A stretch of 64,000 nt of DNA. Source: Zygnema circumcarinatum SAG 698-1b. Its lineage: Eukaryota; Plantae; Zygnematophyceae. Positions 1 to 63,802 of this stretch are shown here, one piece after another. Positions within the stretch are counted from its first letter, which is position 1. Every line of letters starts with the position of its first letter. The DNA is taken from the NCBI GenBank assembly GCA_037447605.1, contig CM074816.1:2508525-2572524 (forward strand), in the 5' to 3' direction. The notes under the pieces were generated by a model that was not told where the DNA came from, ran no database searches, and was given only the letters and a program-made list of their open reading frames with translations. Made by a program: the position numbers and the translations under genes.

Positions 1-2655
1 TGTCAACTTCACTATCGGCTTCTTTGGTCTCTCTGATCTCCTCAATTCTGTTGCGCTGGAATCTCCTCTTGTCTCCCTTTGAGGCTGCTCCTCCTGCGCT
101 GTCTCCACTGGTCTTGTCTCCTTCCTTGCTGACTTCCTTGGTGTCTCTTCATCATCACTCTCATCTGTGTCCGTCTCCTCATCACTATCATCTGCGGGCT
201 GATAACTGAATCTCCTTGGCTGCTGCCTGTCCTCCTTCTGAATATACTCATCCTCATAGAACTGCACATTTCTGCTCGTGATAACCTGCTGCATCTGAGG
301 GTCATAAATCCTGTACTGGTAACTGTCCCGGCTATAGCCAACCATAAAACCTGTTCTCCCTCTAGCTGCCATCTTCCAACTTCTCTGATGTTGAGGGATC
401 CAAACAGTACACCTACTCCCCCACACTCTAAGATGAGAAATATTGGGCTTTGAACCTGCCCACCTTTCTTGTGGAGTCTGCTCCTTCAGCAAAGAGTTGT
501 AGCTCCTGTTCTTGATGTAGGCTGCTGCAGTGACTGCTTCAGCCCAGAGGTTTTCTGGAAGATTACTCTCCACCAGGTTGCACCTTGCAATGTCCATGAG
601 GGACTTGTTCATCCTCTCTGCAACTCCATTTTGCTGCGGTGTATAAGGGGCAGTGAATGCCTGCCTTATACCTGTCTCTGCACACATCTGTTCAAAACTC
701 CTGTTTTTGAATTCGCCCCCATTGTCAGTCTTTATCCTTTTCACTAACTCTCCACTCTCTCTCTCCACCATTGCTTTCCAGCCCAGAAAAGCTTTGAAGA
801 CTTCATGCTTATGCCGGATCATCCGCACCCAAACTTTCCTGCTGTAGTCATCAACAATAGTAAGGAAATAATGATTGCCGCCAATGCTCTCTACATCTGA
901 TGCGCACACATCCATGTGCACAAGCTCCAATCGTTTCCTTGTTCGAATGGTCTCATCCAGCCGCTTTAATGCTTTCTGCTTTAGTTTCCCTTCCTCACAT
1001 CCTTTACAACTATGCTGCATTTCCTTACTGCTCAAAGCCTCCAATCTTGCCACCATCTCCTTCTTACTCATTGCTACTAACGACCTCCAACTGAGATGGC
1101 CTAACCTCCTGTGCCATAAATCAGCATCTGCAGCGTATGCTCTCAACACATGTGACTCTATAAAATTCCTTCCTTTCTTGCCTCTTGCACATCTAACCCT
1201 ATAGAGATTCCCATCATCATATGCCTCCAAAGCCAAGTGCCCATTTGGCCTTCTCACTATGCATCTATCTCCAAAGAAATTAACATTCATGCCATTTCTA
1301 GCAAGCTGCCTCACTGACATTAGGTTCTTTTCAAGGCTTGGAGCATACATGACCTCTGAAACGAGTACTTCCTCTTGTTGTGGTCGCATCATCAAATTCA
1401 GCTTCACTGTCCCGACTTCATCCACGATCTCCTCTCCTCCATTGGCTGTCCGAAGGATCTTTGGAACTGCCAATTTCCTCATCTCCACAAATTCGTCTCT
1501 ATTTGCACAAATATGATGTGATGCGCCACTATCCACTATCCAATCTGCACGTTGCTCCTTCTCCTCCAAACGATAAGCTGACTCCTCATCTTCCTCTGCA
1601 CCTCCTTGAAGATTTCTCACTGAAGCTGCAAGTCCTCTAATGCCGCCTCTTCTACCATAGCCGCCTCTTCCTCTACCTTGCGGTTTATGAAAGCAATCCC
1701 GAGCAAAATGACCTGGCTTTCCACACACAAAACATCCTTCTCCTCTTGTGTCTTCATTCTGTCCACTATCGCCTCTCCAAACGCCTCTTCCGGTAGCTGC
1801 ACCATTTCCTGCTCCAGAACTCCTTGAACTGCTCCAGCAATCCTTGGCAAGATGTCCAGGTTTTCCACAATTGAAACATGCTGCCTGCTGGGCCTGGGCC
1901 TGACCTGTGCGTCCTCTTCCAAACGATGGACCTCCACGGAAGGCACCCCCTCTTGCTCCACGTCCTCTGCCTCTGTAGTTGGCTGCGTAGGCTTCCACCT
2001 GTTCTCCTCCATCCTCATCTCCGCTTTGACTGTGGAAGGCCTCACTAGTCTGAGGCCTATGACCTATGAACTTCTGAAACCTCTGCTTATCGTTCTGCTC
2101 AGATTCTGCTGCCCTTAAAATAGCTTTCACTGACTCTACATCGCTCAACTGTTGAGTTTTTATGTTCCCGACATCTCTGGAGGCTCTCTCTTCACAACAC
2201 CGTAAGATCGTATGGACCTGTTGTTCCTCAGAGATAGTTCCCCCTACATCCTCATACTGTCTTACCAGAACTTCAAATCTTAAAATAAACTCATCTATTG
2301 ACTCTCTCCTTGATAGACTTAAGGTCGTCAATTCTGTCCAGAGGGAATTTCTCACAGCCATAGACTTCTTCAAATAAATCTCCTTTAACTTATCCCACAT
2401 CTCCTTCGCAGTATCCTTGCCCCCTAGCAGAATAAGATGCTTCTTATCTACTAAGCTAGCAATCTGATATTTTGCCTCATCGTCTAATTCCTGCCATTTC
2501 TCCAACTCTGGTCCTGCCGCCGCTGGTTTAGCAGATGTACCTTCCACGATTTTCCAGCATCCTTTCTTCTGCAGCTTGATCTTCGCGAATATCTCCCATG
2601 CTGCATAGTTAGTTCCATCGAAGAATATTTTCCCTTCATCACTCCGCTTACTCAT
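1..2655 (-). CDS. Copia gag-pol polyprotein (partial, open to the window edge)
   Basis: ATG at 2655 gives MSKRSDEGKIFFDGTNYAAW. It continues through two CCHC knuckles (CFNCGKPGHLAKDC, CFVCGKPGHFARDC), protease WIVDSGASHH, GAG-pre-integrase LWHRRLGH, and integrase VHMDV...KTDNGGEF...PQQNGVAERMN. I saw no stop in 885 codons. It is absent from the ORF track, presumably because it has no stop inside the window. Confidence 0.93.
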   Translation of the reverse strand, partial: MSKRSDEGKIFFDGTNYAAWEIFAKIKLQKKGCWKIVEGTSAKPAAAGPELEKWQELDDEAKYQIASLVDKKHLILLGGKDTAKEMWDKLKEIYLKKSMAVRNSLWTELTTLSLSRRESIDEFILRFEVLVRQYEDVGGTISEEQQVHTILRCCEERASRDVGNIKTQQLSDVESVKAILRAAESEQNDKQRFQKFIGHRPQTSEAFHSQSGDEDGGEQVEAYAANYRGRGRGARGGAFRGGPSFGRGRTGQAQAQQAACFNCGKPGHLAKDCWSSSRSSGAGNGAATGRGVWRGDSGQNEDTRGEGCFVCGKPGHFARDCFHKPQGRGRGGYGRRGGIRGLAASVRNLQGGAEEDEESAYRLEEKEQRADWIVDSGASHHICANRDEFVEMRKLAVPKILRTANGGEEIVDEVGTVKLNLMMRPQQEEVLVSEVMYAPSLEKNLMSVRQLARNGMNVNFFGDRCIVRRPNGHLALEAYDDGNLYRVRCARGKKGRNFIESHVLRAYAADADLWHRRLGHLSWRSLVAMSKKEMVARLEALSSKEMQHSCKGCEEGKLKQKALKRLDETIRTRKRLELVHMDVCASDVESIGGNHYFLTIVDDYSRKVWVRMIRHKHEVFKAFLGWKAMVERESGELVKRIKTDNGGEFKNRSFEQMCAETGIRQAFTAPYTPQQNGVAERMNKSLMDIARCNLVESNLPENLWAEAVTAAAYIKNRSYNSLLKEQTPQERWAGSKPNISHLRVWGSRCTVWIPQHQRSWKMAARGRTGFMVGYSRDSYQYRIYDPQMQQVITSRNVQFYEDEYIQKEDRQQPRRFSYQPADDSDEETDTDESDDEETPRKSARKETRPVETAQEEQPQRETRGDSSATELRRSERPKKPIVKLT

Positions 2656-2749
2656 TTTCGATCTCACTCAGAATCACTCACTTGCTTACTCACTTGCTCT
2701 CTCAATAAATTATCAACCAGCTTTCTCTCACTCAGCTCTGATACCACAT

Positions 2750-3186: not shown

Positions 3187-3411
3187 CAGGTAAGGCTCGT
3201 TCTATATTGTTTTGAGTTTGATTGTCTGACTCCGTGATTTCCTAATGGAGCTCAGAATTATATATGGCATAGGAGGGTTACAGCAGTTAGTTGGTTACTG
3301 GTGAGTAGTTTGATAGCTGGTGTGTTGGTCCTGCTATGAAGCAAGCACTCTGCTTGAGAAGCAGGAAATGGGATGGCCCACTCACTGTTTGCGCTTTTCT
3401 ATTGGGTTCAG

Positions 3412-4277
3412 CATCCAAGACCCCGACAATGTCCAGAACCCCGAAAACGAGACGGGAGGTTATTACGCGGGAGCCCAAATTATATTCGACATTTTCAAAG
3501 CGCGCTTCGGCTCGGGCAAAGGAGCGGTCGTTTTCATTGGAGCGATCGTGCTGTGCTTCCCCCTCTCCCTGTCAACAGGAGCCTGCGCTACGGCTCGCGT
3601 GGTGAGTCTCCCTCACCCCTCACTGTTTCGACTGGAAGGACCTGACTGGTTGACGAAGCTCCATTGGGCGTGTCGCTCACATCCCTCTCCCCTCTCCCCT
3701 CTCCCTTCTCCTCTCTCCCCTCTCCCCTCCTCCCCCCTCCCCCCCCCCCCTCCCTCTCCTGCAGTTATGGGCTATGAGCCGCGACGGCGCCACCCCATTC
3801 TCCTCCATCTGGATGAAACTGCACCCCAAAACCAAGGTCCCCATCATGGCCATCATCCTCACGTTCTCTGGCATGGTCATCGTCCTCCTCCCCGTTATTT
3901 GGAGCCCCGTCACCTTCACCGCCATCACCTCCTTCGGCATCATAGGCATCTTGTTGGGCTGCGGAGTCCCCATCCTCATGAAGGTCACGGTGTCCCGCAA
4001 CTCCTTCCAGCCGGGCCCCTTCAGCCTCGGCCCCTTCTACGGGCCCATCGTGAACTACGTCGCCCTCGCATGGATCGTGGCCATCACGGTCATGTTTTCG
4101 CTCCCCACCGTGTACCCCCTCACGGCGGAGTACTTTAACTATGCGCCGGTCGCGCTCGTGTCCCTCTTTGTGGCCCTCACCGTGCCGTGGCTGCTGCCGC
4201 GGAGCGTCTTCGACTTCCAGGGGCCGCGCTCGAACATGACCGACTTCGATATGAAGGAGGAGGGGGGGGGGCAGTAA
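3412..4277 (+). CDS. APC/ACT-family amino-acid (GABA) permease, BAT1-like; last two exons (3412-3601, 3765-4277), 5' part beyond the retrotransposon
   Basis: Spliced translation: (S)IQDPDNVQNPENETGGYYAGAQIIFDIFKARFGSG...ARV|LWAMSRDGATPFSSIW...FQPGPFSLG...LPTVYPLTAEYFNYAPVAL. This matches the BAT1-family motifs SRDGA, PGPFSLG and LPxxYPxTxxxxNYxPVA. Splice sites are GT-AG. Confidence 0.88.
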
Positions 4278-9613: not shown

Positions 9614-12600
9614 ATGGCGACTGCGGAAGGCTCTGTGCCGGAAAACGCCAACGAACGTACGGTCCTTTTGTCGCGTGTGATTTTGTCCTTAGCTTTTGAA
9701 AAGTGAATTGCGCACTAAATCCAAAAACCGAACTTTCGTTCGACGTGCAGATTGCCCCGGCACGGAGGCGGAGACAGCTGGCAGGGCGGCGGCCTGCGAG
9801 GGGTGCCCCAACCAGCAGATATGCGCGACCGCGCCCAAAGGGCCCGACCCGGGTGAGGCGGGGTGGGGGGAAGGGGATAGGGGGTGGGGGGTAGGGTTTA
9901 GGGGGTAGGGGGTTAGGGTTGTGGGGTTAGGGTTTAGGGTGTAAGGTTTAGGGGGTTAGGGTTGAAGGGTTAGGGTGTAGAGTTTGGGGTTTAGGGTTTT
10001 GGGTTGAAGTTGTAGGGTGTAGGGTGTAGGGTGTAGGGTGTAGGGTGTAGGGTGTAGGGAGTAGGGTTTAGGGTTTAAGGTTTAGGGGTTACGGTTTAGG
10101 GTGTAGGGTCTAGGGTTGAGGGTTAAGGGTTTAGGGGTTAGGGTTGAGGGATGAGTGTTTAGGGTTTAGGAGTTAGGGGTTAGGGTTGAGGGCTTAGGAT
10201 TTTAAGGCTTATGGTTAAGTGTAGCGTGTAAGGTCTAGGGTTTAGGGTTTAGGGTTGATGGTGTAGGGTTTGGGGTTTCGGGGTTAGGGTTGAGGGTTTA
10301 GGATTTTAAGGGCTTAGGGTTTTAGGGTTGAGTGTAGCGTGTAAGGTCTAGCGTTTAGGGTTCAGGGTTTAAGGTGTAGGTGTACGGGGCAGGGTTCCGG
10401 GTTAGGGTTTCAGGTTTTTATGCTTTATGGTTTTTAGGTGTAGAGTGTAGGGTTAAGGGTTCAGGGTTTAGGATGCAGGGTTACACCCTGAAATACTGGA
10501 AAAGAGACGTAAAACCCTAAACCCTTGCAGGACTCCTTAGCGCCCGAACCGCTCAAATCTCACCTTCTTTCGCGGCGCAGACGTGGCGGTGGTGGAGGAG
10601 AGGATGCGCGGCGTGAAGCACAAGATTCTCGTGCTCTCCGGAAAAGGCGGAGTCGGAAAAAGCACATTTTCGGCGCAGATGTCATTCGCGCTCGCAGCGC
10701 AGGACAAGCAGGTGACCGCCGAATGCACTCCCCTTCTTTATAAACTTGTATGTGCTTTATGTTATATTTGCATTGTTTTATGTCCCCCCCCCTCTTCACC
10801 CCGGGAAAAACCAAAAAATATTTAAAAAAATTGAACTTCCCCCCCCTCACATGCATGCATGCATGCAGGTGGGCCTGCTGGACATCGACATCTGCGGGCC
10901 GAGCATCCCCAAAATGTTGGGTCTCGAGGGCGAGGAGGTCCACCAGAGCGCGGCGGGCTGGTCCCCCGTCTACGTGACGGAGGGCCTCGGGGTCATGTCC
11001 GTCGGCTTCCTGCTCGCGAGCGCGGACGAGGCCGTCGTGTGGCGCGGCCCGCGCAAGAACGCGCTCATCAAGCAGGTCATGCTCAGGTCATGGGCAGGTC
11101 ATGGGCTCATGGGAAGGTCATGGGCTCATGGGAAGGTCATGGGCAGGTCATGGGCAGGTCATGGGCTCATGGGAAGGTCATGGGCAGGTCATGGGCAGGT
11201 CATGGGCAGGTCATGGTTAGGTCATGCTCAGGTCATGGGCAGGTCATGGCCAGGTCATGGACTCATGGGCAGGTCATGACCTAAGGGCGGGGCTCCTCTG
11301 GTATGCATGGGGGGGTGGTGAAGGGGCAGTAGGGTTGTTAGGGTTTTATGGTCTTCAGGGTCTTTTGGGTTTCTAGGGTTTTCACGGTTGTTAGGGTTTT
11401 TAGGGTCTTTAGGGTTTTCAGGGTTTCTAAGGTTTTCAGCGGGAGGTGTGGGGAAGAGGGAGGGGGGGAATGGACTGGGGTCCTTTGCCTTGGGATGTGG
11501 TCGTGAGAGGAGGGAGCGAGGAGAGGGGGAGGATGCGGTTACTCCCTCCCTTTGTTGAAGAGAGGGAGAGTTAGTTCTTCCTCCTTTTTGGTCGAACAAA
11601 GACCTTCTTCTTCTTCTTCTCCTTGCTGTCGTTCCAACACATGGAACGGGGCTCTCCGTGGTCTCTCAGTTCCTGCGTGACGTGGACTGGGGTGAGCTGG
11701 ACTACTTGATCGTGGACGCGCCACCTGGCACGTCCGACGAGCACATTTCGGTGGTGCAGTACCTCCAGGCGGGACACGTGGACGGGGCCGTCATCGTCAC
11801 CACGCCGCAGGTACACTACCTCACCAAAAATAGGCAAAAAAAAAAAAAAATGAAATGTAGAAAATAAGATGTAAATAAAAGCAAGGATTAAGGTCATACT
11901 GGGGATGATGATGTCATTGTTGAGCGTTGGCTTTTCTTTTTTCCCCCCCATTTTTTTTTCCCTTCGAAAGGGAGACGTAGACGAGAAAATACTTTTGCTG
12001 ACGGAGGGTCGGAGCATGCAGGAAGTTTCCATAATCGACGTTCGCAAAGAAATAAATTTCTGCAAAAAAGTGGGTCTGCGCGTTCTCGGAGTGGTCGAAA
12101 ACATGAGCGGTCTGCAACTGCCCCTCAGCGCGCTGCACTTCGCGAAGGTGGGGCCCACCGGGGAGGAGCGTGACGTCACGGAGGAGGTCCTAGAGGAGCT
12201 TAAGAAGGTGAGAGAGAGAGACAAATGTTACAGATGTCTTAACTTTATCGAGGTCCGAACAAATGAAGCGGACATCTTCTATTTTCTATTTGGTACATAT
12301 CTAGCGTTCACATCTACGGTTAGAAAGTTTTCGAAACGAATTTTCATGAAAAATTATCCTCTCTGGTAACACAGGTGGCGCCCCATTTATTGAATGGAAT
12401 AACGGCGAAATCTGAGATTTTTTATCAGAGTGGAGGAGGAGCGGAAGCCATGGCTCGGCAGTTCGGAGTTCCCTTCCTCGGAAGAATCCCAATGGACCCC
12501 TCTCTAAGCAGAGCGGCTGAGGAAGGGAGGTCTTGTTTCCCCTCCAAGGAGGACCTCTCCTCTCCTTCTCCAAGCGTAGCCGCTCTTCAGCGAATTATTT

Positions 12601-12641
12601 CACAAGTGGTTTCTAAGGTGGAGGGGCGGAAGGGCGCTTGA
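9614..12641 (+). CDS. NBP35: Cytosolic Fe-S cluster assembly factor NBP35
   Basis: Exons 9614-9656, 9751-9852, 10581-10711, 10869-11075, 11670-11810, 12022-12207, 12375-12641, all in phase. Motifs: N-terminal CPG...[12 protein letters not shown]-loop [44 protein letters not shown]. Confidence 0.96.
9890..10480 (+). repeat. Degenerate telomere-like (TTTAGGG/TTAGGG/GTAGGGT) array filling NBP35 intron 2
   Basis: Many GGGTTTAG/GGGTTAG units and a run of TAGGGTG at about 10012-10060. Confidence 0.9.
11073..11279 (+). repeat. 9-11 bp minisatellite (GGGCAGGTCAT) at the start of NBP35 intron 4
   Basis: About 20 tandem units. The first unit is the real exon/intron junction CAG|GTCATG. Confidence 0.9.
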
Positions 12642-14156: not shown

Positions 14157-17100
14157 TCAGAGGGGGAGCCCTCCCTCTCCCTCCTCCGTGGGAGGGCCCA
14201 CCAAGAGAGCCTTCGCGCCGATCCCTCCGTGGTGAGTGCTGATGAGCTCGAGGTCGTCCATGCTCTGAACCCTCTCCACAAGAAGCTCGCGAGTGTTCGC
14301 CTGCCCCTGGCTAGAGGCCTCCTGCACTCCTCTCACAAGGAGGATGTGAGAGAGCGAAAGAGGGAGGGAGAGAGGGAGGGAGGCGGGGGGGGGGGGGGGG
14401 GGGGGGGGGGGNNNNNNNNNNGGGGGGGGGGGGGGGGGGGGGGGGGGTGGGGGAGAAGAAGAGAGGTAAATGGCCGAAAAAAGTAAAGATAAAGGTAAAA
14501 TGAAACAAAAGAACAAAGGGGAAAAAGAAGAAACATCCACAGAGAAAGGGTCGCCTCTTTTCCTAGAAAGTGTTTTAGGGTTTCTTACCAGGTCCCACTT
14601 GCTGTTCCTCTGCGATCTGTTCTCTGCGCTGTGATCGAAAAAGAAGACCACAACTGTCATGTCGTCGTGGTACTCTCGCCGCTGCCCAGAGGACAACCGC
14701 AAAAGCTCTTGGTACGGAATCTGATGCCTCTCTGCCGCTTTATGTATGGCAGCGCGTATCAGTTTCCGTGCAACGTCCTGTCCGTAAAAGCATAGAACAG
14801 TCACACGAAACAGAAATAAGAACTGGAAAGCAACAAAAACGAAAGAGTGTAGAAGATAAACGGAGAAGGACATTCATTTTTCTGAGATCGAGCAATATTA
14901 GAAAGTGTTTAGACGAGAAGAAGGGAGGGAGATTGTGGACCTTTTTGGGAGAGGAGGCAACCATATCCACTGCTTCCTGATTGGAGATGTATTCAAAGAG
15001 ACCGTCGGAGGCAACAATCACAAAAGCATCGTGAGGAGAAAGGAGACGGACGGCAATGCTCGGTTCCGCTGTCAGTAACGGAGGGTTGAACGGTTCCGGA
15101 ACACGGAAACGTGCAAAAAGAGGATCTCTGTTGAACTCTTTTGACTTCAAGTAAAGGTCTCCAAATGCTCTCGTTACCTGTCACGGAGTGAAGCCACAGA
15201 GAACAGGTGAATTTGGAGTTTTTTATCACCGTTCCGACCGAAAATGCGACCAACCGATGAGATAAAGGGCGACGACAACGGGAGGGTCAAGCAGGAGGAG
15301 AAAGAAACGAAGGAATGAAACAGGATATTGGAAGGACACAAAGAGGCAAGAAAACGGAGGGAGGGAGGGGAGGGAANNNNNNNNNNGGAGGGTGGGAGGA
15401 GCGGAGGGTGGGAGGGGAGGGAGGGGAGGGAGGGGAGGGAGGGGAGGGGAGGAGAGGGGAGGGAAGGGGAGAGAGGGAGGGACGCACCGACACTTTCCCC
15501 TTAACGCGGTAGCGGCCGCCCTTCTCCACCACCGCGTCGGGCGTGTCGCAGTGTTCCGCGGCGAAGGCCTCCCTGATGGAGGGCGCGTTCACGTTGTGGT
15601 CCACCGACAGCTGGAGGGCGCGGCACTCGCGCTCGCCGCTGCTGCTGCGACGGACCTGCTCCGCTCAAAGGGGGGGGGAGGGGGAGGGGGAGGGTGAGAG
15701 CTCTCTCCCTCTGGGCCACTCTTTCTTTCTCTCCCTCTCCCTCTCTCTCGGTCTCTACTCTCTCGCTTACTCCGTCACTCCCTCGTCCTCACTGTCTTGC
15801 GCTCTCTCTCCCTTTCTTTCTAGGTCTCTTGCTCGTTCTCGCTCTTGGCCTCTCTCACTTTCTCGCTCCCCCTCTCTTTCTCGCTCCCCCTCTCTCCCTC
15901 TCTCGCTTTCTTGCTCTCTCGCTCTCGCTATCAATTTACATGAGAACACACACGCCCACACAAGAAGGTGGTGGGAATGTCATCTGACGGCAAGACTCCG
16001 CTAGAGAAGGACGAAGCAGGGAGACGGGAAGGGCAGACAGAAGGCAAAGGGGAGGTTAGAAAAAAGTTGGCTATAGGTGACTGTGAAAAGTTAAGGGGAA
16101 AGAAAGGAGAAGGTCACTCGAGAAGGTCGAGGGAAAGGGCACATCAAACACATACACACATATACACATATATGTATAACTCCTTAGTCTTTGTTATAGT
16201 CAGACAGAGTGCCCTGCCAGCCCCCACCTGTCCCAGCACCGCCCTGCAGTCCCCTGCATTGGCCACCCATATCGCGTTCGCCGTGACTATGGCCGCCGCG
16301 GAGCACGCCCCGACCGTGGCGAGGTGCGGGGCCGCCTCGAAGGCGGACTGCGCGGCGGCCTTGAAGGACCGCTCGGTCGCCGCAAAGGCCACGCGGAAGG
16401 CCTCCGCGGACACGCTGCCGCCGCGCTGACGGAACTCGTCTGAGGGAGGGGNNNNNNNNNNGGGAGGGGGAGGGGGAGGAGGAGAGGGAGGGCGTGAGAG
16501 AAAGTTGGACGAGGGAGTGAGAGGGAGAGGGAGAGGGACGGCGTGAGAAAGAGGGACAGGAGCGTTGTGGGAGAGAGAGAGAAAGAGAGAGAGAGAGACA
16601 GAAACGGAACGACCGAAACGAGTAAGAAACGAGGGAACGGAGTGATCAAAAGAAAAAAGAAGAGGCATGACAAAGAGAGTAAAGTAAGGGGAACAGAACA
16701 GAGATTCATCGAGCACGGTGAGGGAGTACGTGCCGGTGTGTTTGCAAGGGTCATTTGGACTTAGGGTTGTGTCGATTGGAGGGGGAGGTGGGAGGGGAGG
16801 GGAGGTGTGGGAAGAGATGGAGGCGAGGAGGAGGAGAGTGAAGTGGGGTTGGCAGGGGGTGAATGGATACAAGAATGATAGGAGCAGTTTAATGAAGCAG
16901 TTTATCAACGAATTTGAGCAGCTTACCAATTAGATTTTTGTAGAGATTGTCCCGAAGGAACTCTGCTACCTCTACCCCTCCATGCCCATCATGAATGCCA
17001 ATGTATACACCGCTAGAAGAAGATTCCACCTGCCACAAAAAACTCAATAAAAGATAACTTCAAGAAACACACTTAAATATCTGATTAAAAGAAGTCATCC

Positions 17101-17166
17101 GAAGACAATCATGTGGGCAGTACATGATCTTTCCAAAGTCCATCTGCCTTAAAACAGAGAGAGAGC

Positions 17167-17202
<36 letters not shown>

Positions 17203-19037
17203 AAGAGAGAGAAAAACGAGAGAGAGAGAGAGGGAGAGGGGGGAAGTGGGGAGGAAGAGAGGAACGACTCACCTCTCCTGTATCTTCCATAACGTAGTTT
17301 GCTTCGTACATAGCCAATGAGAAGTGGCCAAATGGCGTAGACTCAAGGGCTTTGTACCACACTTCTCTCCTGTTTCCACGGCTATATGCGTCCGCCTTAA
17401 CAGCGCCCCGTTTCAGTCTCCGTAAAAGGCCGCCCGTCACCCATGCGGACATGGAACTGCGTACTTGCCGTCTACGTGACTGCTTCATAAAGACTTGGCT
17501 TGGAGAGGACTCGGCACCGTCAACTTGCATGTCGTCATCTTCTCCTCCGTGGAAGGCAACGTCAAGCCCCACCTGCTCCAAAAAAACACAAATTGTTCAC
17601 AGTATAAATGATTTTTTTTGATGATGTTGTCAGAATGTTCTTGTTAGGGAACAAAGTCTTCATTATTTTTGGCAAAAAGGCTGCATCGAAAATTGCGGAT
17701 AGATTGTGAATTACAAGCATAGGTTGCTGTTCGAACCCACCTCTTCTTCCCGCCGCTTGACTCGCAAAACTCTGAAAAAGCTGAGTATGTAGAATAAGAT
17801 GAAAGTCGTCACACCGACCCACAGGTAAACCACGAGGAGACCCACAATCTGAGGGAAGATTTCAACCAAACCCTAAGCCCTAATTAAGAAATCAACGACG
17901 CAGAATGAATGCAAAATCCGGTACTTTTACCTGAACCCCACTCATACAATGCTCACTTTTGCTCATAATAAATTTCCATTTGCTGCCCACATTCTTTTTG
18001 GTGATCCATTTTAGTCCCTAAAAGTGATTTTTTTTTTTTTTTTTTTCTTACATCGAGCATGGAAACACAGAGCACAGTTCCGCAAACCTGAATCCCGAGA
18101 AGTTCCGGTCCTCCTCCGTAAAACAGTCCCCACGCTTGAGGGTTTTCTATGCTGTACGTTCTCGTAATGTCAGCCTTTGTGGCGAAAAACCCAACAGCAA
18201 GTGCTCCCCACGTTCCGCAAAAGAGGTGAGTGGGAGCTGCTTGTACGACATCGTCAATTTTTAATTTGCTTAAAACCCAAACCCCGGCTTGATACCAAAG
18301 GCCCGCCCCGACTCCTGCACAAAAATTTGCCCTAAATTCAATTCATTGTTTCTTTGTTTCTTTGTTTCTTTGTTCCTTTGTTCCTTGCAGGTTTTTGGGG
18401 TCAATGTATAGTCGTATTTCGCAAGTGAATGCGATGTCTGAGGTAAAAGAAAATGAAACTCCGATGAATAGGGCGGCTAATTTTGTGTTGGATATTCGGA
18501 CGGAAATCATGTGAGAGCGGGATGAGTGAGTGAGAAAGGGAATCAGAGAGATTGGGTGGGGGGAAGAGGGGGAGAGTGGAAAGAAGGGAGAGAGGGGGGG
18601 AAGAGAGGGGAGGATGATGGAAGCAGGTGTGGGTGTGACAACGAGAGGGCGATGAGTACAGGGGGTTGTGAAAAAGTGCGACGAGGGAGCAAGGGAAAGA
18701 GAGAGACAGAGAGAGGGAGAAAGAGAGGGGGAGAGAGAAGCTTAACAAGCGAAAGAGTGGGAAGAGGGAGAAAGGGAAAGAGTGAGTCAAAGAGAGGAGA
18801 GAGAAAGGAAGGTAGAAAGGGAAAGAGAGAAACCCACAAAAGGAAACGAATGCGAGGAGGGATCAAGGCAAATAGCGTGACAGAGAAACGGAGCGATGGA
18901 GGGACGGAGAGAGGGAGAGAGGAGGAGGGAGAGAGGGAATAGGAAACAGAGGGGGAGAGGGAGATGGAGACGGCGAGCGGGAGAGACGCAGAGAGAAAGA
19001 GCGACAGAGAGAGAGAGAGACAGAGAGAGAGAGAAAG

Positions 19038-19094
<57 letters not shown>

Positions 19095-19097
19095 GAC

Positions 19098-19142
<45 letters not shown>

Positions 19143-21813
19143 GAGAGACAGAGAGAGAGACAGAGAGAGGGAGACAGAGAGAGAGACAGAGAGAGAGAGA
19201 CAGAGAGAGAGACAGAGAGAGAGAGAGAGACAGAGAGAGGAGGAGAGAGAGAGAGGAAGACCCACCTATGATTGCAGACGCATAGGGCCGCACAATGCTG
19301 CTTGTCGCGCATGCTGCAACGAGCCCTCCTATGACCGCGTTGAAGGTGTCTTCAGGACTCGGCTCCGTCGTCCAAAAGGTGAGGGCGAAGGTGGTGAAGC
19401 CGGAAAACGCGGCAGAAATCGTGGTATTCACACACACGTGGGCGACGCTGTACACCCACGTGGCGGAGTCTTGGTTTATGAGGTCAACGGAGCCGCCGTT
19501 GAATCCGAAGAATCCGACCCATAGGATGATGGTTCCGGCAGCCATGTATACCTGCAAGAAGGATGAGAGAATGGAGGAAGCAAGGAAAAAAAAGTGAATG
19601 AAATTCCTGAGAGGAGGAGCCTGTAAGAGCCTGTGAAATAGTAAAAGACACTCGAAAACTCCCACAGAAACCCCAAAAACGAGTGAAAAAAACCCTAAAA
19701 TGTGCGAAATGAAGAGTCTAAAAGGACCTCAGGGTTTGTAGGGTTTTTAGAAAAAAACCCTAAAAGCCCTAAAAACCCTAAGAATCCCAAAAAAAGAATG
19801 AATAGGTCACCATGGAATGCCCTTTGAACGGAACGGGATTTCCTTCGATGTCATATCGCCCTATGCGTGGCCCCACCATCCATGCTCCAACCAGTGACGT
19901 CACGCCTCCGGTTACATGCACCACCATGGAACCTGCGTTGTCCAGGACTCCGTTCGTACTGAGAATTATGGCATTCCGACTGGCAGAAAGCAGCCCGTGC
20001 TGCGACCAAACAATGTGAGCGATCACGGGGTATATGAGGGAGCTCAGGAAAAAGCTGCAAGGAACAGAGGGAAAAAACGAGCACCCCAAAACGTTAGGGT
20101 TTGGTTGGTAGAGCAAATGGGGTATTTGAGGTTTTGGGGATCAAAAGGAAATTTTAGGGTTTGTAAGTTTTTTTAGGTGGTTAGGGCTTCTAGGGTTTCA
20201 GGGAAGTAAAGGATTTCAGCAGAGTTTCTAGATTAGGGATTGTGAGCTAAATTTCTAGCACTTCTAGGGTTTCCAATATTACTAGCTTTTCGGGGTTTCA
20301 GGGTTTTTCAGTTTGGTTTCCGGCTTTCAGGTTTTAGGGTTTCCGGGTTTCAGCGTTATAGGGATCTTAGACGTTCAGGTTTTTAGGGTTTCCGTGTTTT
20401 AATGTTTTAGGGTTTTCGGTTTTCATGGTTTTAGGGTTTTTACGACATCGGGCTTCAGAGTTGATGGGTTTTAGGGTTTAGGGTTTTTCGCACTTGTACA
20501 GCAGATAGGCCCACAGGTGTGTGCGCTCCGCCACGGCTCCTGCGATGATCGTTGTGGACGTAGCCGCGAACGTGAACTGAAAGAAGAACTGAACAGCATT
20601 GTCGCCGTTCATGTTGCCAAAGAACGCCACCTGGCAGCGCGCCATTGGACCAGAAAAAGGAGAAGTCCGCCTTAGTCAACGGCGCTTGCGGAAGGAACAC
20701 TGTTCTTTGCAGCACCGTGTTTGGGAACGGAACGGAGAACAGAACTGTGCAAGTAAACTGTGGAACTAGACACCTACAGAATGATGTATGGTTATGTCAT
20801 GGAACCATGGAACCATGGAACCATGGAATCATGGCATCATAGCATCATGGCATCATGGCATCATCACACATACATAAGGCATTACGGCATTATAGATACG
20901 TACGAAATGATTAGATTGTACATTGTAGACCGATGAAAGTTATGAAATTGTAGTGGTTGTACCTCATCGTTGTCGCCGTACATCCACCCGAAGAAGAGGG
21001 AGCCGTCTCCGAATCCGATGGCGTATCCGAACATCCAAAACGCAATGGCGCACACGCACGTGTCGAGAACATTCTTTATCATTATGTTGCGCGTGTTCTT
21101 GAACCGCACGGTGCCGGCCTCCAGCAGCGAGAACCCCAGCTGCGAGAGGGGGAGAGGGAGAGAGAGAGAGAGCGCGCGAGAGAGAGAGAGAGAGAGAGAG
21201 TGTGAGAGAGAGAGAGAGAGAGGGGTGGGGATGGAGGGATGGGTTGAGAAAGGGGATGAGAGGGTGGGAGGCGAGGGAGGAGGGGTTGAGGGAGGAGGTG
21301 GGAGGGAGGGGGAGAGAGCGAGGGATGGGTTGAAGGAGGAGATGAGAGGGTGGGAGGCGAGGGAAAAGGGGCCGAGAGAGGAGGTGAGAGGGAGGGGGGG
21401 AGTGGGGGAGAGAGGGAGGGATGCGTTGAAAGTGGGGATTAGAGACAGGGCGGAGAGGGAGGAGGGGTCGAGAGAGGAGGTCAGAGGGAGAAGGAGAGGG
21501 GGAGAAATGGGTTGAAAGAGGGGATGAGTGGGTGGGAGGCGAGGGAGGAGGGGTCGAGAGAGGAGGTGAGAGGGAGGGAAGGATGGGTTGAAAGAGGGGA
21601 TGGTTGCATTAGAATCCCAGGGTTCAGGGCCTTCCAACATTCCTAGGGTTCAGGACCGCGCACGCAGACCTGCATGAAGAAGACGAAGACGCTCGCCGTA
21701 ATTCGCCACACGTGCGCCATCGTCCGCTCATGCTGCGCCACCTGTCCGCTCACAGCCTCCAGAGCCGCGCTCAGCGCCGCCGTCTCATTCCGCAACGACG
21801 CCAGTTGATCCAT
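14157..21813 (-). CDS. AMT ammonium transporter - PP2C (clade D-like) phosphatase fusion protein, about 898 aa, 14 exons
   Basis: Exons: 21813-21670, 21139-20963, 20630-20494, 20054-19811, 19551-19266, 18314-18088, 17848-17741, 17572-17273, 17029-16927, 16439-16228, 15655-15488, 15177-14941, 14777-14589, 14321-14157. Total 2697 nt, all GT-AG with consistent phases. AMT motifs: FFMQ|[86 protein letters not shown]|[12 protein letters not shown]2C motifs: WYK...GHFSLA...[47 protein letters not shown]. Confidence 0.88.
18500..19260. repeat. Long (GA)n/(GAGACA)n polypurine tract in intron 5 of the AMT-PP2C gene
   Basis: Directly visible simple repeats, representative of many introns in the window. 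Confidence 0.9.
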
Positions 21814-21817
21814 CTGA

Positions 21818-22520
21818 TTTAGGGTTCAGGACATGGGATTAGGGATCAGGAAAATGGTTGGGCGCAGGGTGAGGGTTAGAGTTAGGGTTTAAGGTTCAGG
21901 GTTAGGGTTACTGTCGGGGTTCAGGATTAGAGTTAGGGTTCAGGGTAAGAAGTAGGGTTCAGGGAGCAGGGTTCAGGGTGAGGTTTAAGGGTGAGGGTTT
22001 AGGGAGCAGGGTTCAGGGTGAGGTTTAAGGGTGAGGGTTCAGGGAGCAGGGTTTAGGGTGAGGGTTCAGGGAGCAGGGTTTAGGGTGAGGGTTCAGGGAG
22101 CAGGGTTTAGGGTTAGGGTTCAGAGTCAGGGTTCAGGGTGAGGGTTCAGGGAGCAGGGTTCAGGGTTAGGGTTCAGGGTTGGGGTTCAGGTTAAGTGTCC
22201 AGGGAGCAGGGTACAGGGTTAGGGTTCAGGGTTGGGGTCCAGGGTGAGTGTTCAGGGAGCAGGGTACAGGGTTAAGGTTCAGGGTTAGGGGTCAAGGTGA
22301 GGTTTCAGGGAGCAGGGTTCAGGGTGAGGTTTATGGGTGAGGGTTCAGGGAGCAGGGTTCAGGGTGAGGGTTCAAGGTCAGGGTTCAGCGTTAGGGTTCA
22401 GTGTGAGGGTTCGGGGAGAAGGGTTCAGGGTGAGGTTTAAGGTCAGGGTTCAGCGTTAGGGTTCAGTGTGAGGGTTCGGGGAGCAGGGTTCAGGGTGAGG
22501 ATTCAAGGTGAAGGGGTTTA
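21818..22520 (+). repeat. Telomere-derived higher-order repeat (GGGTTCAGGGAGCAGGGTTCAGGGTGA-like), probably a 5'-UTR intron of AMT-PP2C
   Basis: Degenerate GGGTT(C/T)A units. On the minus strand a CAG acceptor lies immediately before the ATG at 21813. Confidence 0.8.
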
Positions 22521-23383
22521 CGATGGTCAACCGCCTGATGAGTCGACCTCCTCCCCTCCCCTGAAGCCTCAGTCAGGCGACACGTGGCCGTGACCCCCGT
22601 GCCCACGTGGCTCGCGGCCGACGGTCCCGCGTAGAGGCCCCCCGCCTTTCTCGCCGCCGCGGTCTGCTCGCAGTAACCGTTGCCGCCTACCGCGGGGCGT
22701 TGACTTCCGGTCGGTGCTGCCCGGGACAGTCGCCGTATCGGCAGTACGTATCGGATACCGCATCATGATGCTTGTACCGTATGGTGCGTCAGACAAAAAC
22801 AAAAGCGTCGATCCGTCAATCGGATAATAAGACCGAGTACTTTTACGAACGAGGATCTGCCTTTAAAAATGTACTTCTTCTCTTTTACAGGCATTTGTTG
22901 CCAAAGACTGTACGGAAAAATGCCAGCGAAGGAGGGGGACACCAGCAAATCATGAAAACGATCTCCAATATCAGATTCTGTAATAATAGCACACTTGCGA
23001 AAATGTCGGCCCGCCCTTCCAAAACAGCCCCCTACGGTGGACTGCAGAAACGACGAGTTATAGTACGACAAAACGTACAATGTCGTACAGGTACATTAAC
23101 AACAACACGTACGATCAGGGCGAAGAAGCGACAAACGGCGGTCAAGCTGGAGCTAAGATTAGGGTTAGGGTTAGGGTTAGGATTAGGGTTCAGGACTTGG
23201 GTTAGGGTACAGGAGTAGGGTTAGGGTCAGGATTAGGGTTAGGGTTCAGGATTAGGATAAGGGTCAGGATTAGGGTTGGGGTTCAGAATTAGGGTTAGGC
23301 TTCAGGATTAGGGTCAGGCTTCAGGATTAGGGTTAGGGTTCCGGATTCGGGTTAGGGTTACGTCCGCGGTTCAGCGCGGCGGC

Positions 23384-25831
23384 ATGGCAGCGCGCCACGT
23401 GGTGGCCGTGCGGAACGTGCCGGAGGCGCTCGAGCCGCGCGCGCTGGAGCGCGTGTTCGCGCACTTCGGGGCCGCGCGCGTCGCCAAGTGCGCGCTCAAC
23501 CCTCACGCGGCTCGGAACCTCACAGACTCTAAATTCTATTCCTCAACCCAAAGCTTAAAACCCTGAACCCTAACTCTTAACCCTGTAACTACTACCCGAA
23601 TCCGTTACTCTAAACCCTGAAGCCTAGACCCTAAACCCTAACTCTTAACCCTACAACTACCACCCGAATCCGTTACCCTAAACCCTAAATTCTGAACCCT
23701 GAAGCCTAACCCTAAACTCTAATCTCTAGACCCTAAACCCTAAACCCCTAACCCCAAACCCTGAACCCTAAACCGTAACCCTAACCCCATACTCTAAACC
23801 CTAAACCTTTAACCCTGAATCTTAAATCCTAAACCCTAAACCCTAAACCCTGACCCCTAAACCCTAAACCCTGAACCCTAAAGCCTAACCCTAAACTCTA
23901 AACCCTAAACCCTAAACCCTAAGTCCTTAACCCGAAACCCTAAACCCTAACCCTTAGCCTCTAACCCCTTAACCCTAAACCCTAAACCCTAAACCCGAAA
24001 CCCAAACCCCTAAACCCTAACCCCTAAACCCTAACCCCTGAACCCTAACCCCCTAAACCCTAACCCCTAAACCCTAACCCCTAAANNNNNNNNNNCTAAC
24101 CCCTAAACCCTAACCCCTAAATCCTAAACCCTAAACCCTAAACCCTAACCCCTAAACCCTAACCCCTAAATCCTAAACCCTAAACCCTAACCCCTAAACC
24201 CTCAACTCTAAAACCCTAAACCTTAAACCCTAAACCCTAACCCCTAGATCCTAACCCCCCTTTTTGCTCATCCCCAGAAAGCGCAACGTGGTGTTCGTTT
24301 ACTTCGCGGAGGAAGCCGAAGCCGACCGAGCTCGATCTCAGCTGCACAGGTCTGAAAATTCGAAATTCGAACTACTTCTCAGGAATTCCTAGATTCGTGA
24401 TTGGCTTTGCACGATATTCGATATTCGATATTCGATTCATTTAGATTTCTTTGATAAATTCTTCAACTGCTTTTCAGGCTTGAAGGTTTGAGGTTCTAGA
24501 GTTTCCGTGTTTTATAATTACGGAATTCGGAACGGAAAGCGTTAGAATTTTAAGTCAATTTAATCCAAGGGGACCTTCAAATTTTTTTTTGTGGAATTTA
24601 GATTTTTAGGTTTGGAGGGCTAATGGGCCTCTCCCACCGTGACACGTGGCGCATGCAGAGTGCGGCTCCTTGATAAAGTAATCTCTGTGGAGAAGGTCCC
24701 ATTGCAGCTCTCTCCTTCCGAATCAGAAAAAGAGAAAATTTCCGAAATTTCTGAAAACCCTAAAATTTCTTTGCACCCCAATTTACAAGAGCAAGGGGTA
24801 CCGATTTCAGTTCCACCGATAATTCCGCATTTTAATATTCCGTCCAATCTGAATGTGCCACGTGGCCACTCTACGCCAATTCCGACGAATGACGTGAGGG
24901 CGAAGGAGGTGCCCATAGCGCCCACTTTAGGGCTCGATCGTCCTTTTCCTCCACATTTAGAGTACGTTTACAACCCAAAATTACAAGTATTATTATGGTT
25001 ATTGTTATTTTAAATTCTGAAACTTGAACTTTGCAGCTTATTAGCCATTAGTCATTAGCCATTCTTGCATGCTGGGGGGGGCAGGTACATGTATCCTCCG
25101 CCCGACGGAAATATTTTGACAAACATCGTCAACACGCTGATTGCTGTTCCTCGCTTTTATACACAGGTCTCTCTCTCTCTTTCCCTCTCTCTCTCTCTCT
25201 CTATCTCCCCCTCTCTCTCTCTCTCTCCCTTTTCTCCCCCTTCCTTTCCGCCTTCGCTCTCACTCTGTCTCTTCTTCGCTCTCTCCCCTACTCACTCCCA
25301 CTATCCCTCTCTCCTTCTCCCCCACCGTCAACCCCTCTCTCTCCCTCCTCACCCCTCCCACCCTCTCCCTCTCTCCCCCCTCACTCCTTCCTCCCTCCCC
25401 CGTTTCTCTCTCCTCCCATTCCCCCACCACCCCTCGCGGCCTTGACATTGCTTCATGCTCTTTCCCAGAAATCTCTCCTTAGCAGAAACTGCCTTACTAA
25501 ATACGCACAGGCTTCTTTTGTTTCTTGTTCTTTTTTGGACTTTCATTTCGTTTTTTTTTTTTTTTCACCTGCCCGTTTCAAAGTTTTCAAATCCCTTCTC
25601 CCTGTGCGGCTGATTTTCCGTTGAAATTTTTTCTCAGGTTTTGCATCTTATGAACAAAATGAGTTTGCCGGCTCCGTTTTGTCCGGCTCTGCCTACCCCT
25701 CCTCTCCCTCCCCCAGTCGCGCCTCCCCCAGAAGAGACAAGACAGACCGTACCGCCCCCTCCAGCAGAAGAAGCTTCCACAAGCACGGAGTCTGAGATGC
25801 ATGACTCTGACACGGTCTCTCTCTCTCTCTC

Positions 25832-63132: not shown

Positions 63133-63802
63133 TTAGAAGCAGTAGTAGCCCGTGCAGTGGTTGCAGAGGAATATCTCCCCCTTGCAGGGGACCCCCGGGT
63201 AGCACCACTGCGGCTTGCAGGGCGAGCCCTTAGGGCAGCTCGTGGCCGTACAGTTGGGCTGCGCGCCGGGATTGACGCAGTGCCCGTTAAAGCAGTCCTT
63301 GCCGGCCGCGCACTTGAACCCGCACTTGCCGCAGTTATTCGTGTCACCAAACACCACATTGATGCACTTGTTGCTGCGAAGCCACCGCATTAAAAATGAG
63401 TGGAGGCCACCAAGACCGCATGTTCAGATGCATCCATGGATGCGGCAATTTCACGGAAGCAAGGTTAAGTGGGAGGAGAACAAGCCATGGGAGAGAGGCT
63501 CACTCGCAGCAGGTGATGGCGTTGGGGTCGTAGACGCCCTGCTTGGGTACGAGGAAGTGGTTGAAGCTGGGGTCGTAGCAGAGGGTGGCGTTATCTCGGC
63601 AGTACTTGTGTTTTCCCACTCCCGGCGGGTGCTTGCCTACGCCCGGCGGATGCCGACCCAGGAGGCGCCGCCCGAGGACGAGGGGCTCCTCCGCCATGGC
63701 GCCCTCCTCACTCGCGCTCTGCGGGAGGGCAGAGAGAGAGAGAAAGAGGAAAAGAAAGGGGAGCAGAAGGAGCTTTGCGGAGCTCGAAGGGAGGCCCGCC
63801 AT
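63133..63802 (-). CDS. Secreted Cys-rich STIG1-domain-like protein
   Basis: Exons 63802-63504 and 63373-63133. Signal peptide LLLLPFLFLFLSLSA, an RRLL site, then TCCD|NKCINVVFGDTNNCGKCGFKCAAGKDCFNGHCVN, which has STIG1-type spacing (CCxxxCxxxxxDxxNCGxCGxxC). Confidence 0.78.

What the first reader, a model, noticed from the sequence alone, without database searches (positions are those of the whole stretch)
14157..21813. Ammonium transporter fused in frame to a PP2C phosphatase: candidate eukaryotic ammonium transceptor
Seen: 14 GT-AG exons join into one frame of about 898 aa. The AMT portion is complete through the last TM ([25 protein letters not shown]) and the C-terminal signature LRVKRREEE|[10 protein letters not shown]. 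That signature opens exon 17572-17273, which continues with no stop into the PP2C N-terminal motif (WYK...[16 protein letters not shown]), so the fusion junction is inside one exon and does not depend on a splice choice. Established: prokaryotic Amt proteins fused to signalling modules act as ammonium sensors (e.g. the histidine-kinase fusion Ks-Amt5). Land-plant PP2C.D enzymes dephosphorylate the penultimate Thr of the plasma-membrane H+-ATPase, and plant AMT1s are phospho-regulated in the C-tail. Inference: this could be a one-protein NH4+ sensor that links ammonium flux to dephosphorylation of the H+-ATPase or of other AMTs. I know of no described AMT-PP2C fusion in the green lineage, but I could not search.
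Basis: partly seen in the sequence, partly recalled or inferred. Interest (0 to 1): 0.95.

Follow-up and report, generated by a model that had tools for sequence, protein, structure and literature searches.

The report
Algal ammonium transporter–phosphatase fusion (AMPC)
This alga has one real, expressed gene that joins an ammonium channel to a protein phosphatase; the combination was already named AMPC in 2024 in algae and bryophytes, but I found no test of whether it senses ammonium.

Summary
Fourteen GT-AG exons give an 898-aa AMT–PP2C.D frame with no stop. All three assembly gaps are intronic. Spliced contigs from three studies carry AMT exons into the PP2C start; three of them join exons 6-7-8 in one piece.

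It is not new. The architecture is AMPC (PMC11665922, PNAS 2024). Full-length orthologues occur in Klebsormidium, Chara, Closterium, Mesotaenium and Marchantia, and all ten Marchantia introns fall at this gene's intron positions. The scan reported another AMPC gene in this genome (s1-350926).

Function is untested in the papers I could search. The pore, most of the bacterial receptor site (Q48, E55, K70, N71, D74, T134, Y149), the catalytic aspartates and the two residues tied to PP2C.D dimer activation are intact. The plant AMT1 phospho-Thr is absent, which weakens the published self-regulation idea. The presumed SAUR motif is degenerate and the linker is disordered.

Best reading (0.5): an ammonium-responsive membrane phosphatase that probably also conducts ammonium. 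Main rival (0.33): a transporter with a tethered, ungated phosphatase.

The parts
14157..21813 (-). AMPC gene, coding span (14 exons, 898 aa)
   Evidence: splicing of exons 5-8; orthologues
21670..21813 (-). exon 1 (aa 1-48): N-terminal helix running into TM1; ends at Q48
20963..21139 (-). exon 2 (aa 49-107): receptor-site residues E55, K70, N71, D74
20494..20630 (-). exon 3 (aa 108-152): gate F128, T134, A137 (Ser in Sd-Amt1), Y149
19811..20054 (-). exon 4 (aa 153-234): W169, D191, AMPC-typical N192, first pore His H199
19266..19551 (-). exon 5 (aa 235-329): F248 (Trp in most Amts), gate F251, S255
   Evidence: joint to exon 6 seen as loose end
18088..18314 (-). exon 6 (aa 330-405): D350, D351, second pore His H359
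17741..17848 (-). exon 7 (aa 406-441): last transmembrane helix and start of the AMT tail
17273..17572 (-). exon 8 (aa 442-541), fusion junction: AMT tail end without the phospho-Thr (A447), basic linker of about 60 aa, PP2C N-terminal strands with E537, D538
16927..17029 (-). exon 9 (aa 542-575): DGHGG metal-binding motif, D555
16228..16439 (-). exon 10 (aa 576-646): D639
15488..15655 (-). exon 11 (aa 647-702): S663, inferred equivalent of PP2C-D5 S190
14941..15177 (-). exon 12 (aa 703-781): D709, Y711 (inferred equivalent of D5 Y238), D760
14589..14777 (-). exon 13 (aa 782-844): degenerate KREMRY segment, HDD motif D820
14157..14321 (-). exon 14 (aa 845-898, stop): weakly conserved C-tail
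16452..16461 (.). assembly gap in intron 9, 12 nt before the exon 10 start
15377..15386 (.). assembly gap in intron 11
14412..14421 (.). assembly gap in intron 13

Best explanation
The gene is an AMPC orthologue: one polypeptide with an 11-helix Amt domain, a flexible basic linker of about 60 residues and an intact clade-D PP2C. That much is shown. The mechanism is inferred. Like other Amts it forms a trimer in the plasma membrane, which places three phosphatase domains close together on the cytosolic face. Ammonium entering the pore reaches the retained N1/N2-type pocket and shifts the AMT tail. That changes how the tethered PP2C.D domains pair or dock, and clade-D phosphatases are reported to be active as dimers. 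The output is ammonium-dependent dephosphorylation of neighbouring membrane proteins, most likely the H+-ATPase or other transporters and kinases, to handle the charge and acid load of ammonium uptake. The pore lacks two of the three bulky plug residues of Ks-Amt5, so some flux probably continues (a transceptor).
For: Single spliced transcript through the junction. Fusion kept from Klebsormidium to Marchantia with shared introns. Both domains under purifying selection against the two closest transcripts: dN 0.12-0.23 with synonymous sites saturated. E55, K70, N71 and D74 are invariant in 27 AMPC sequences, T134 and Y149 in 26 of 27; AtAMT1;1 has Cys at the Glu switch position and shows no ligand-dependent switching. 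Closest solved structures are the two characterised sensors, Ks-Amt5 and Sd-Amt1, whose fused enzymes respond to ammonium. PP2C-D2/D5 are activated by dimerisation via S193/S190 and Y241/Y238; the equivalents by spacing are kept. A stand-alone Chara PP2C.D binds the H+-ATPase. The two known plant control routes look weakened or absent: no T460 equivalent, degenerate KREMRY segment.
Against: No functional data exist in the papers searched. The N1/N2 residues are also in 80-99% of other Amts sampled, so they do not diagnose a sensor. One N1 ligand is lost: Sd S107 is Ala here and in 23 of 27 AMPC sequences. The linker varies from 48 to 89 aa, is 9-41% identical and is predicted disordered, with no HAMP-like helices, which argues against rigid coupling. 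The PDB similarity reflects which cluster-2 Amts have been deposited, not function. The interaction shown in Chara used the stand-alone PP2C.D, not the fusion.
Confidence: 0.5

Rival explanations
1. Ordinary ammonium transporter carrying a tethered phosphatase that is not gated by ammonium. The fusion only guarantees co-expression and proximity, keeping the transporter, neighbouring AMTs or the H+-ATPase dephosphorylated. This includes the autoregulation idea of PMC11665922.
For: Complete pore: F128, F251, H199, H359, W169, S255, D191, D350, D351. The Ks-Amt5 plug residues Y30 and F34 are L54 and T58 here. Long, variable, disordered linker. A PP2C (ABI1) activates AMT1s in trans in Arabidopsis.
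Against: The canonical phospho-Thr is missing and only one Ser/Thr column is even moderately shared in the linker, so self-regulation would need an unknown site. An intact pore core is also present in non-transporting Ks-Amt5. Entrance residues changed across AMPC (F161 to Asn in 26/27, W212 to Phe in 27/27).
Confidence: 0.33
2. The AMT domain is only a membrane anchor and trimer scaffold that localises and clusters the phosphatase; ammonium plays no part.
For: PP2C.D activity depends on dimerisation. Fixed substitutions at the vestibule could mean a reduced pore.
Against: The AMT domain is about as conserved as the catalytic domain or more so (67% vs 56% identity to Marchantia), and the pore and N1/N2 residues are near invariant.
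Confidence: 0.12
3. The fused mRNA is real but the working products are separate, through alternative starts in exon 8, alternative AMT-only splicing, or cleavage in the basic linker.
For: Exon 8 has in-frame Met codons at aa 456, 470 and 482. The linker is exposed and disordered.
Against: No contig covers the interior of intron 7 and no other joints appear in 4 runs (contigs drop rare forms). The linker Met positions are not conserved. The frame has stayed open across streptophytes.
Confidence: 0.05

Closest known systems
AMPC (AMT-PP2C) subtype of PP2C.D, PMC11665922 (PNAS 2024)
   Same: N-terminal AMT plus clade-D PP2C in one chain; streptophyte alga; 45-77% identical to orthologues; one AMT clade; shared introns.
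   Different: Nothing in architecture. The paper ran no assay on the fusion in its main text and suggested autoregulation of AMT; the canonical phospho-site is absent here.
Bacterial ammonium receptors Ks-Amt5 (histidine kinase) and Sd-Amt1 (diguanylate cyclase), PMC5764959 and PMC11152129
   Same: Amt fused to a cytosolic enzyme; six of seven listed pocket and switch residues plus Q22 kept; top structural matches.
   Different: Eukaryotic Ser/Thr phosphatase output; S107 replaced by Ala; no HAMP; two of three Ks-Amt5 plug residues absent; about 30% identity; ammonium gating untested.
Bacterial AMT-SpoIIE fusions
   Same: Amt plus a PP2C-fold phosphatase.
   Different: Independent origin per PMC11665922; a SpoIIE-bearing Amt (P0258) falls outside the AMPC clade.
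Land-plant AMT1 transporters (AtAMT1;1, PMC13745463)
   Same: Cluster-2 Amt with Q, N, D pocket residues, twin His and Phe gate.
   Different: AMPC keeps the Glu switch (Cys in AtAMT1;1), has no T460 equivalent and no N-terminal Cys, and carries an enzyme.
Stand-alone PP2C.D of vascular plants
   Same: All catalytic motifs; S/Y pair linked to dimer activation; nearest relatives of the phosphatase domain.
   Different: Tethered by a whole AMT; KREMRY segment degenerate.

Membership tests
AMPC | Complete AMT domain N-terminal to a PP2C domain in one open frame | tested here: met
AMPC | Phosphatase domain belongs with PP2C clade D | tested here: met
   Nearest stand-alone relatives are PP2C.D-type proteins, grouped with AMPC at 100/97 against a distant outgroup; PP2C.C was not sampled
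AMPC | Orthology with the charophyte and bryophyte fusions | tested here: met
   AMT domains form one clade, support 1.0; 10 of 10 Marchantia introns and 6 Klebsormidium introns match
AMPC | Distinct from bacterial AMT-SpoIIE | tested here: met
   PF00481, not PF07228; P0258 lies outside the clade
Ammonium receptor (AmR) class | First half of the N1/N2 signature, QX6EX15NX2D[F/T] | tested here: met
   Q48, E55, N71, D74, T75
Ammonium receptor (AmR) class | Second half of the signature, TX2[S/T] (Sd T104, S107) | tested here: not met
   In register it is T134 and A137; the regex hit was off register. Ser is present in Chara and one Klebsormidium copy
Ammonium receptor (AmR) class | Switch residues K44 and Y119 | tested here: met
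   K70, Y149
Ammonium receptor (AmR) class | Fused enzyme activity changes with ammonium; binding dominates over transport | not testable with these tools
   needs enzyme assays and electrophysiology
Transporting Amt | Twin His, Phe gate, Trp/Ser vestibule, D160, D309/D310 | tested here: met
   not diagnostic, since Ks-Amt5 has them too
Land-plant AMT1 subfamily | Regulatory Thr at the T460 position of the C-tail | tested here: not met
   A447; Ala or Val in 26 of 27 AMPC. Register of T460 in the G-x-D-x-T-x-H motif is from my own knowledge
Land-plant AMT1 subfamily | Grouping with land-plant AMT1 in a tree | not tested
   no sequence named as a land-plant AMT1 came up in the listed hits
PP2C.D | Metal-binding and catalytic acidic residues | tested here: met
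   E537, D538, D555, D639, D709, D760, D820
PP2C.D | Ser/Tyr pair linked to dimer activation (D5 S190, Y238) | tested here: met
   S663 and Y711, 48 apart as in 69 of 71 stand-alone sequences; mapping is by spacing, not by aligning AtPP2C-D5
PP2C.D | SAUR-binding motif | tested here: inconclusive
   KREMRY reads RHQIPY here and is variable across AMPC. That this segment is the SAUR motif is from memory; the source paper was not held

The most novel reading that the evidence does not exclude
AMPC is a eukaryotic one-component ammonium receptor: ammonium in the N1/N2 pocket of the AMT trimer toggles dimer-dependent activation of the fused PP2C.D. It may also be the ancestral form of clade D, so that the SAUR-controlled phosphatases of vascular plants arose by losing the AMT. 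The phosphatase tree leans that way (AMPC one clade in 0 of 200 bootstrap trees) but does not prove it (p-AU 0.07, distant outgroup).
Probability: 0.3. Interest if true: 0.75.

Novelty: new member of a known kind. Interest (0 to 1): 0.36.

Why it matters
Whether plant-lineage AMTs sense ammonium, and through what output, is still open; the 2026 AtAMT1;1 structures did not show a transceptor function. AMPC has the output enzyme built in, so sensing can be tested in one purified protein, and Marchantia has an orthologue (BBN10952.1) open to genetics. This locus adds a clean, transcribed member and specific residues to mutate. The architecture itself is published, so the discovery value is modest.

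Tried and rejected
Gene-model artefact or two adjacent genes: rejected. Misassembly at the gaps: no sign; all are intronic and the flanking exons stay in register. Novel architecture: rejected. A full match to the AmR signature by regular expression: rejected as off register after alignment to Sd-Amt1. Aromatic plug at Ks Y30 as a sensor marker: uninformative, since the bacterial fusion Amts sampled also have Leu or Val. AMPC phosphatases as paraphyletic to stand-alone PP2C.D: suggestive only. Searches for follow-up work on AMPC or on the Marchantia gene found nothing. The PNAS supplement and the SAUR-motif paper were not held. Exons 8, 11 and 13 alone gave no Pfam hit. The joined 898-aa model was not sent to any search or folding tool; exons were searched by reference and the 77%-identical homologue P0024 served as the folding proxy.
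Full report
Verdict. The fusion gene is real and transcribed, and it is a member of a family that already has a name, AMPC. Its function is untested in the literature I could search. The evidence modestly favours an ammonium-responsive phosphatase over a transporter with a passive tether.

Observation. The 14 exons on the minus strand (21813 to 14157) give 2697 nt, 898 aa and a stop, with GT..AG at every intron. Pfam places Ammonium_transp on exons 2, 4, 5, 6, 7 and PP2C on exons 10 and 12. Exon 8 (17572-17273) has no gap and no stop, and carries both the AMT tail end and the first PP2C motif.

Gaps. The three gaps named by the program lie in introns 9, 11 and 13. At the intron 9 and 11 junctions the protein aligns to orthologues with no missing or extra residues; at intron 13, in the weakly conserved tail, it does so with the two closest. 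Marchantia has introns at the 575 and 702 positions and Klebsormidium at 702 and 843-844. I did not lay reads across the gaps, so continuity there rests on this indirect evidence and on contig lengths.

Transcription. Seven runs hold exon 8; none is on record as RNA. Laid on 17270-18320, contigs of four runs from three studies cover only the exons and show no differing letters. X1, X2 and X5 skip the 239-nt and 168-nt introns exactly. X6 shows the first joint, and the second only as an 8-letter loose end. A loose end in three runs matches the 3' end of exon 5. By arithmetic, the 2868-nt contig of X1 fits a 277-nt leader plus the model up to about 59 nt into exon 14, and the 1396-nt contig of X6 ends about 12 nt past the stop; these are length fits, not alignments. 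Contigs cannot exclude rare isoforms, and they do not prove a single molecule.

Relatives. The junction exon alone finds Closterium proteins and Chara GBG59851.1. With the Chara protein as query, two-domain proteins appear in Klebsormidium (two), Marchantia polymorpha, several Closterium strains, Mesotaenium and unnamed run assemblies; M. paleacea is in the Marchantia cluster. No vascular-plant fusion was listed. The model is 77% identical to P0024 and 45-65% to the other full-length fusions. P0024, P0022 and P0004 each sit as one open frame on a 2-3.7 kb contig. All ten Marchantia introns fall at positions of this gene, and the two introns flanking the junction exon are shared with Marchantia and Klebsormidium. 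The AMT domains form one clade with a long stem, with this gene among Closterium and Mesotaenium relatives; no close stand-alone sister was resolved. This fits a single old fusion and a conjugating green alga as the source, which is an inference.

Prior description. PMC11665922 states that many PP2C.Ds of charophytes and bryophytes carry an N-terminal AMT, names them AMPC, finds them independent of bacterial AMT-SpoIIE and absent from vascular plants, and suggests they may autoregulate AMT activity. Its interaction tests used the stand-alone Chara PP2C.D. No other paper in the library mentions the fusion. An earlier scan note reports another AMPC gene 2.45 Mb away in this genome; I saw it after finding the paper and did not check that locus.

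Anatomy. The model of homologue P0024 (mean pLDDT 88.7) shows a long N-terminal helix running into TM1, the Amt helices, a disordered linker at 452-517 and a PP2C fold. Its best structural matches are Ks-Amt5 and Sd-Amt1, then transporting Amts, then PDP1 and ABI1. Both domains are under purifying selection, while the linker and N-terminal helix drift.

AMT residues (27 AMPC and 204 other Amt sequences). The pore core is intact. The receptor pocket keeps Q48, E55, N71, D74 and T134 and the switch pair K70 and Y149, described for Sd-Amt1. The fifth N1 ligand, S107, is Ala here and in most AMPC, so the published signature is only partly met. These residues are common in cluster-2 Amts, so they permit sensing but do not show it. 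AtAMT1;1 has Cys at the Glu position and no switching. Two entrance residues are AMPC-typical: Asn for F161 (26 of 27; 3 of 204 others, one of them an unlabelled AMPC) and Phe for W212 (27 of 27; 32 of 204). Two of the three Ks-Amt5 plug residues are smaller here. The position I take from memory as equivalent to T460 is Ala or Val in 26 of 27.

Phosphatase residues. All catalytic acidic residues are present. PP2C-D2 and D5 are reported to be activated by dimerisation, with S193/S190 required and Y241/Y238 inhibitory when phosphorylated; by the conserved 48-residue spacing these are S663 and Y711, kept in 27 and 29 of 31 AMPC sequences. The KREMRY segment, which I recall as the SAUR-binding motif, is degenerate; the Chara SAUR did not bind PP2C.D. 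In the phosphatase tree, stand-alone PP2C.Ds fall among the AMPC domains, but a single AMPC clade is not rejected (p-AU 0.07) and the outgroup is distant.

Mechanism. Shown: one chain, both domains intact and conserved. From established knowledge: Amts are trimers, fused bacterial Amts gate their enzymes with ammonium, and PP2C.D acts on the H+-ATPase and works as a dimer. Inferred: ammonium binding alters pairing or docking of the tethered phosphatases, which then act on neighbouring membrane proteins (0.5). Rivals: transporter with an ungated tethered phosphatase (0.33), scaffold only (0.12), separate products (0.05). The disordered, variable linker is the main argument against gating, although Ks-Amt5 also couples without a HAMP.

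Limits. The protein searches are word- and length-limited, so absence from mosses, hornworts or vascular plants is not shown here. No land-plant AMT1 or PP2C.C was knowingly in the trees.

Score. Interest 0.36: confirmed, new member of a named family, function open and now more sharply testable.

Noticed in passing
window 21840-24270: Degenerate telomere-like CCCTAA/TTAGGG arrays in both orientations upstream of the start codon, apparently within introns of a spliced leader; they give many imperfect inverted pairs. Similar tracts sit in introns 3 and 4 and near 10-12 kb.
   Followed up: partly
window 1-2667 (-): Open 889-aa frame of a copia-type LTR retrotransposon (gag, zinc knuckles, protease-like, integrase), running off the window edge.
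   Followed up: partly
window 10540-12640 (+): Nbp35/NUBP-type P-loop NTPase gene facing the AMPC gene tail to tail; no link to AMPC tested.
   Followed up: partly
window 3317-4274 (+): Amino-acid permease exon (PF13520), another nitrogen-transport gene about 10 kb away; linkage not tested.
   Followed up: partly
window 63136-63423 (-): Small Cys-rich STIG1-like frame.
   Followed up: partly
window 16228-16439 and 15488-15655: Exons 10 and 11 are 70-73% GC against 45-57% for most other exons, and both are flanked by CT- or C-rich introns.
   Followed up: no
window 21670-21813: AMPC proteins share a 30-35 residue N-terminal helix continuous with TM1, poorly conserved in sequence; a candidate trimer coiled coil.
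   Followed up: partly
P0001, P0002, P0013, P0027, P0029, P0031: Several public Closterium and Mesotaenium AMPC models are mis-spliced (skipped exon 7, retained intron pieces, split genes), so database counts of the fusion may be too low.
   Followed up: partly
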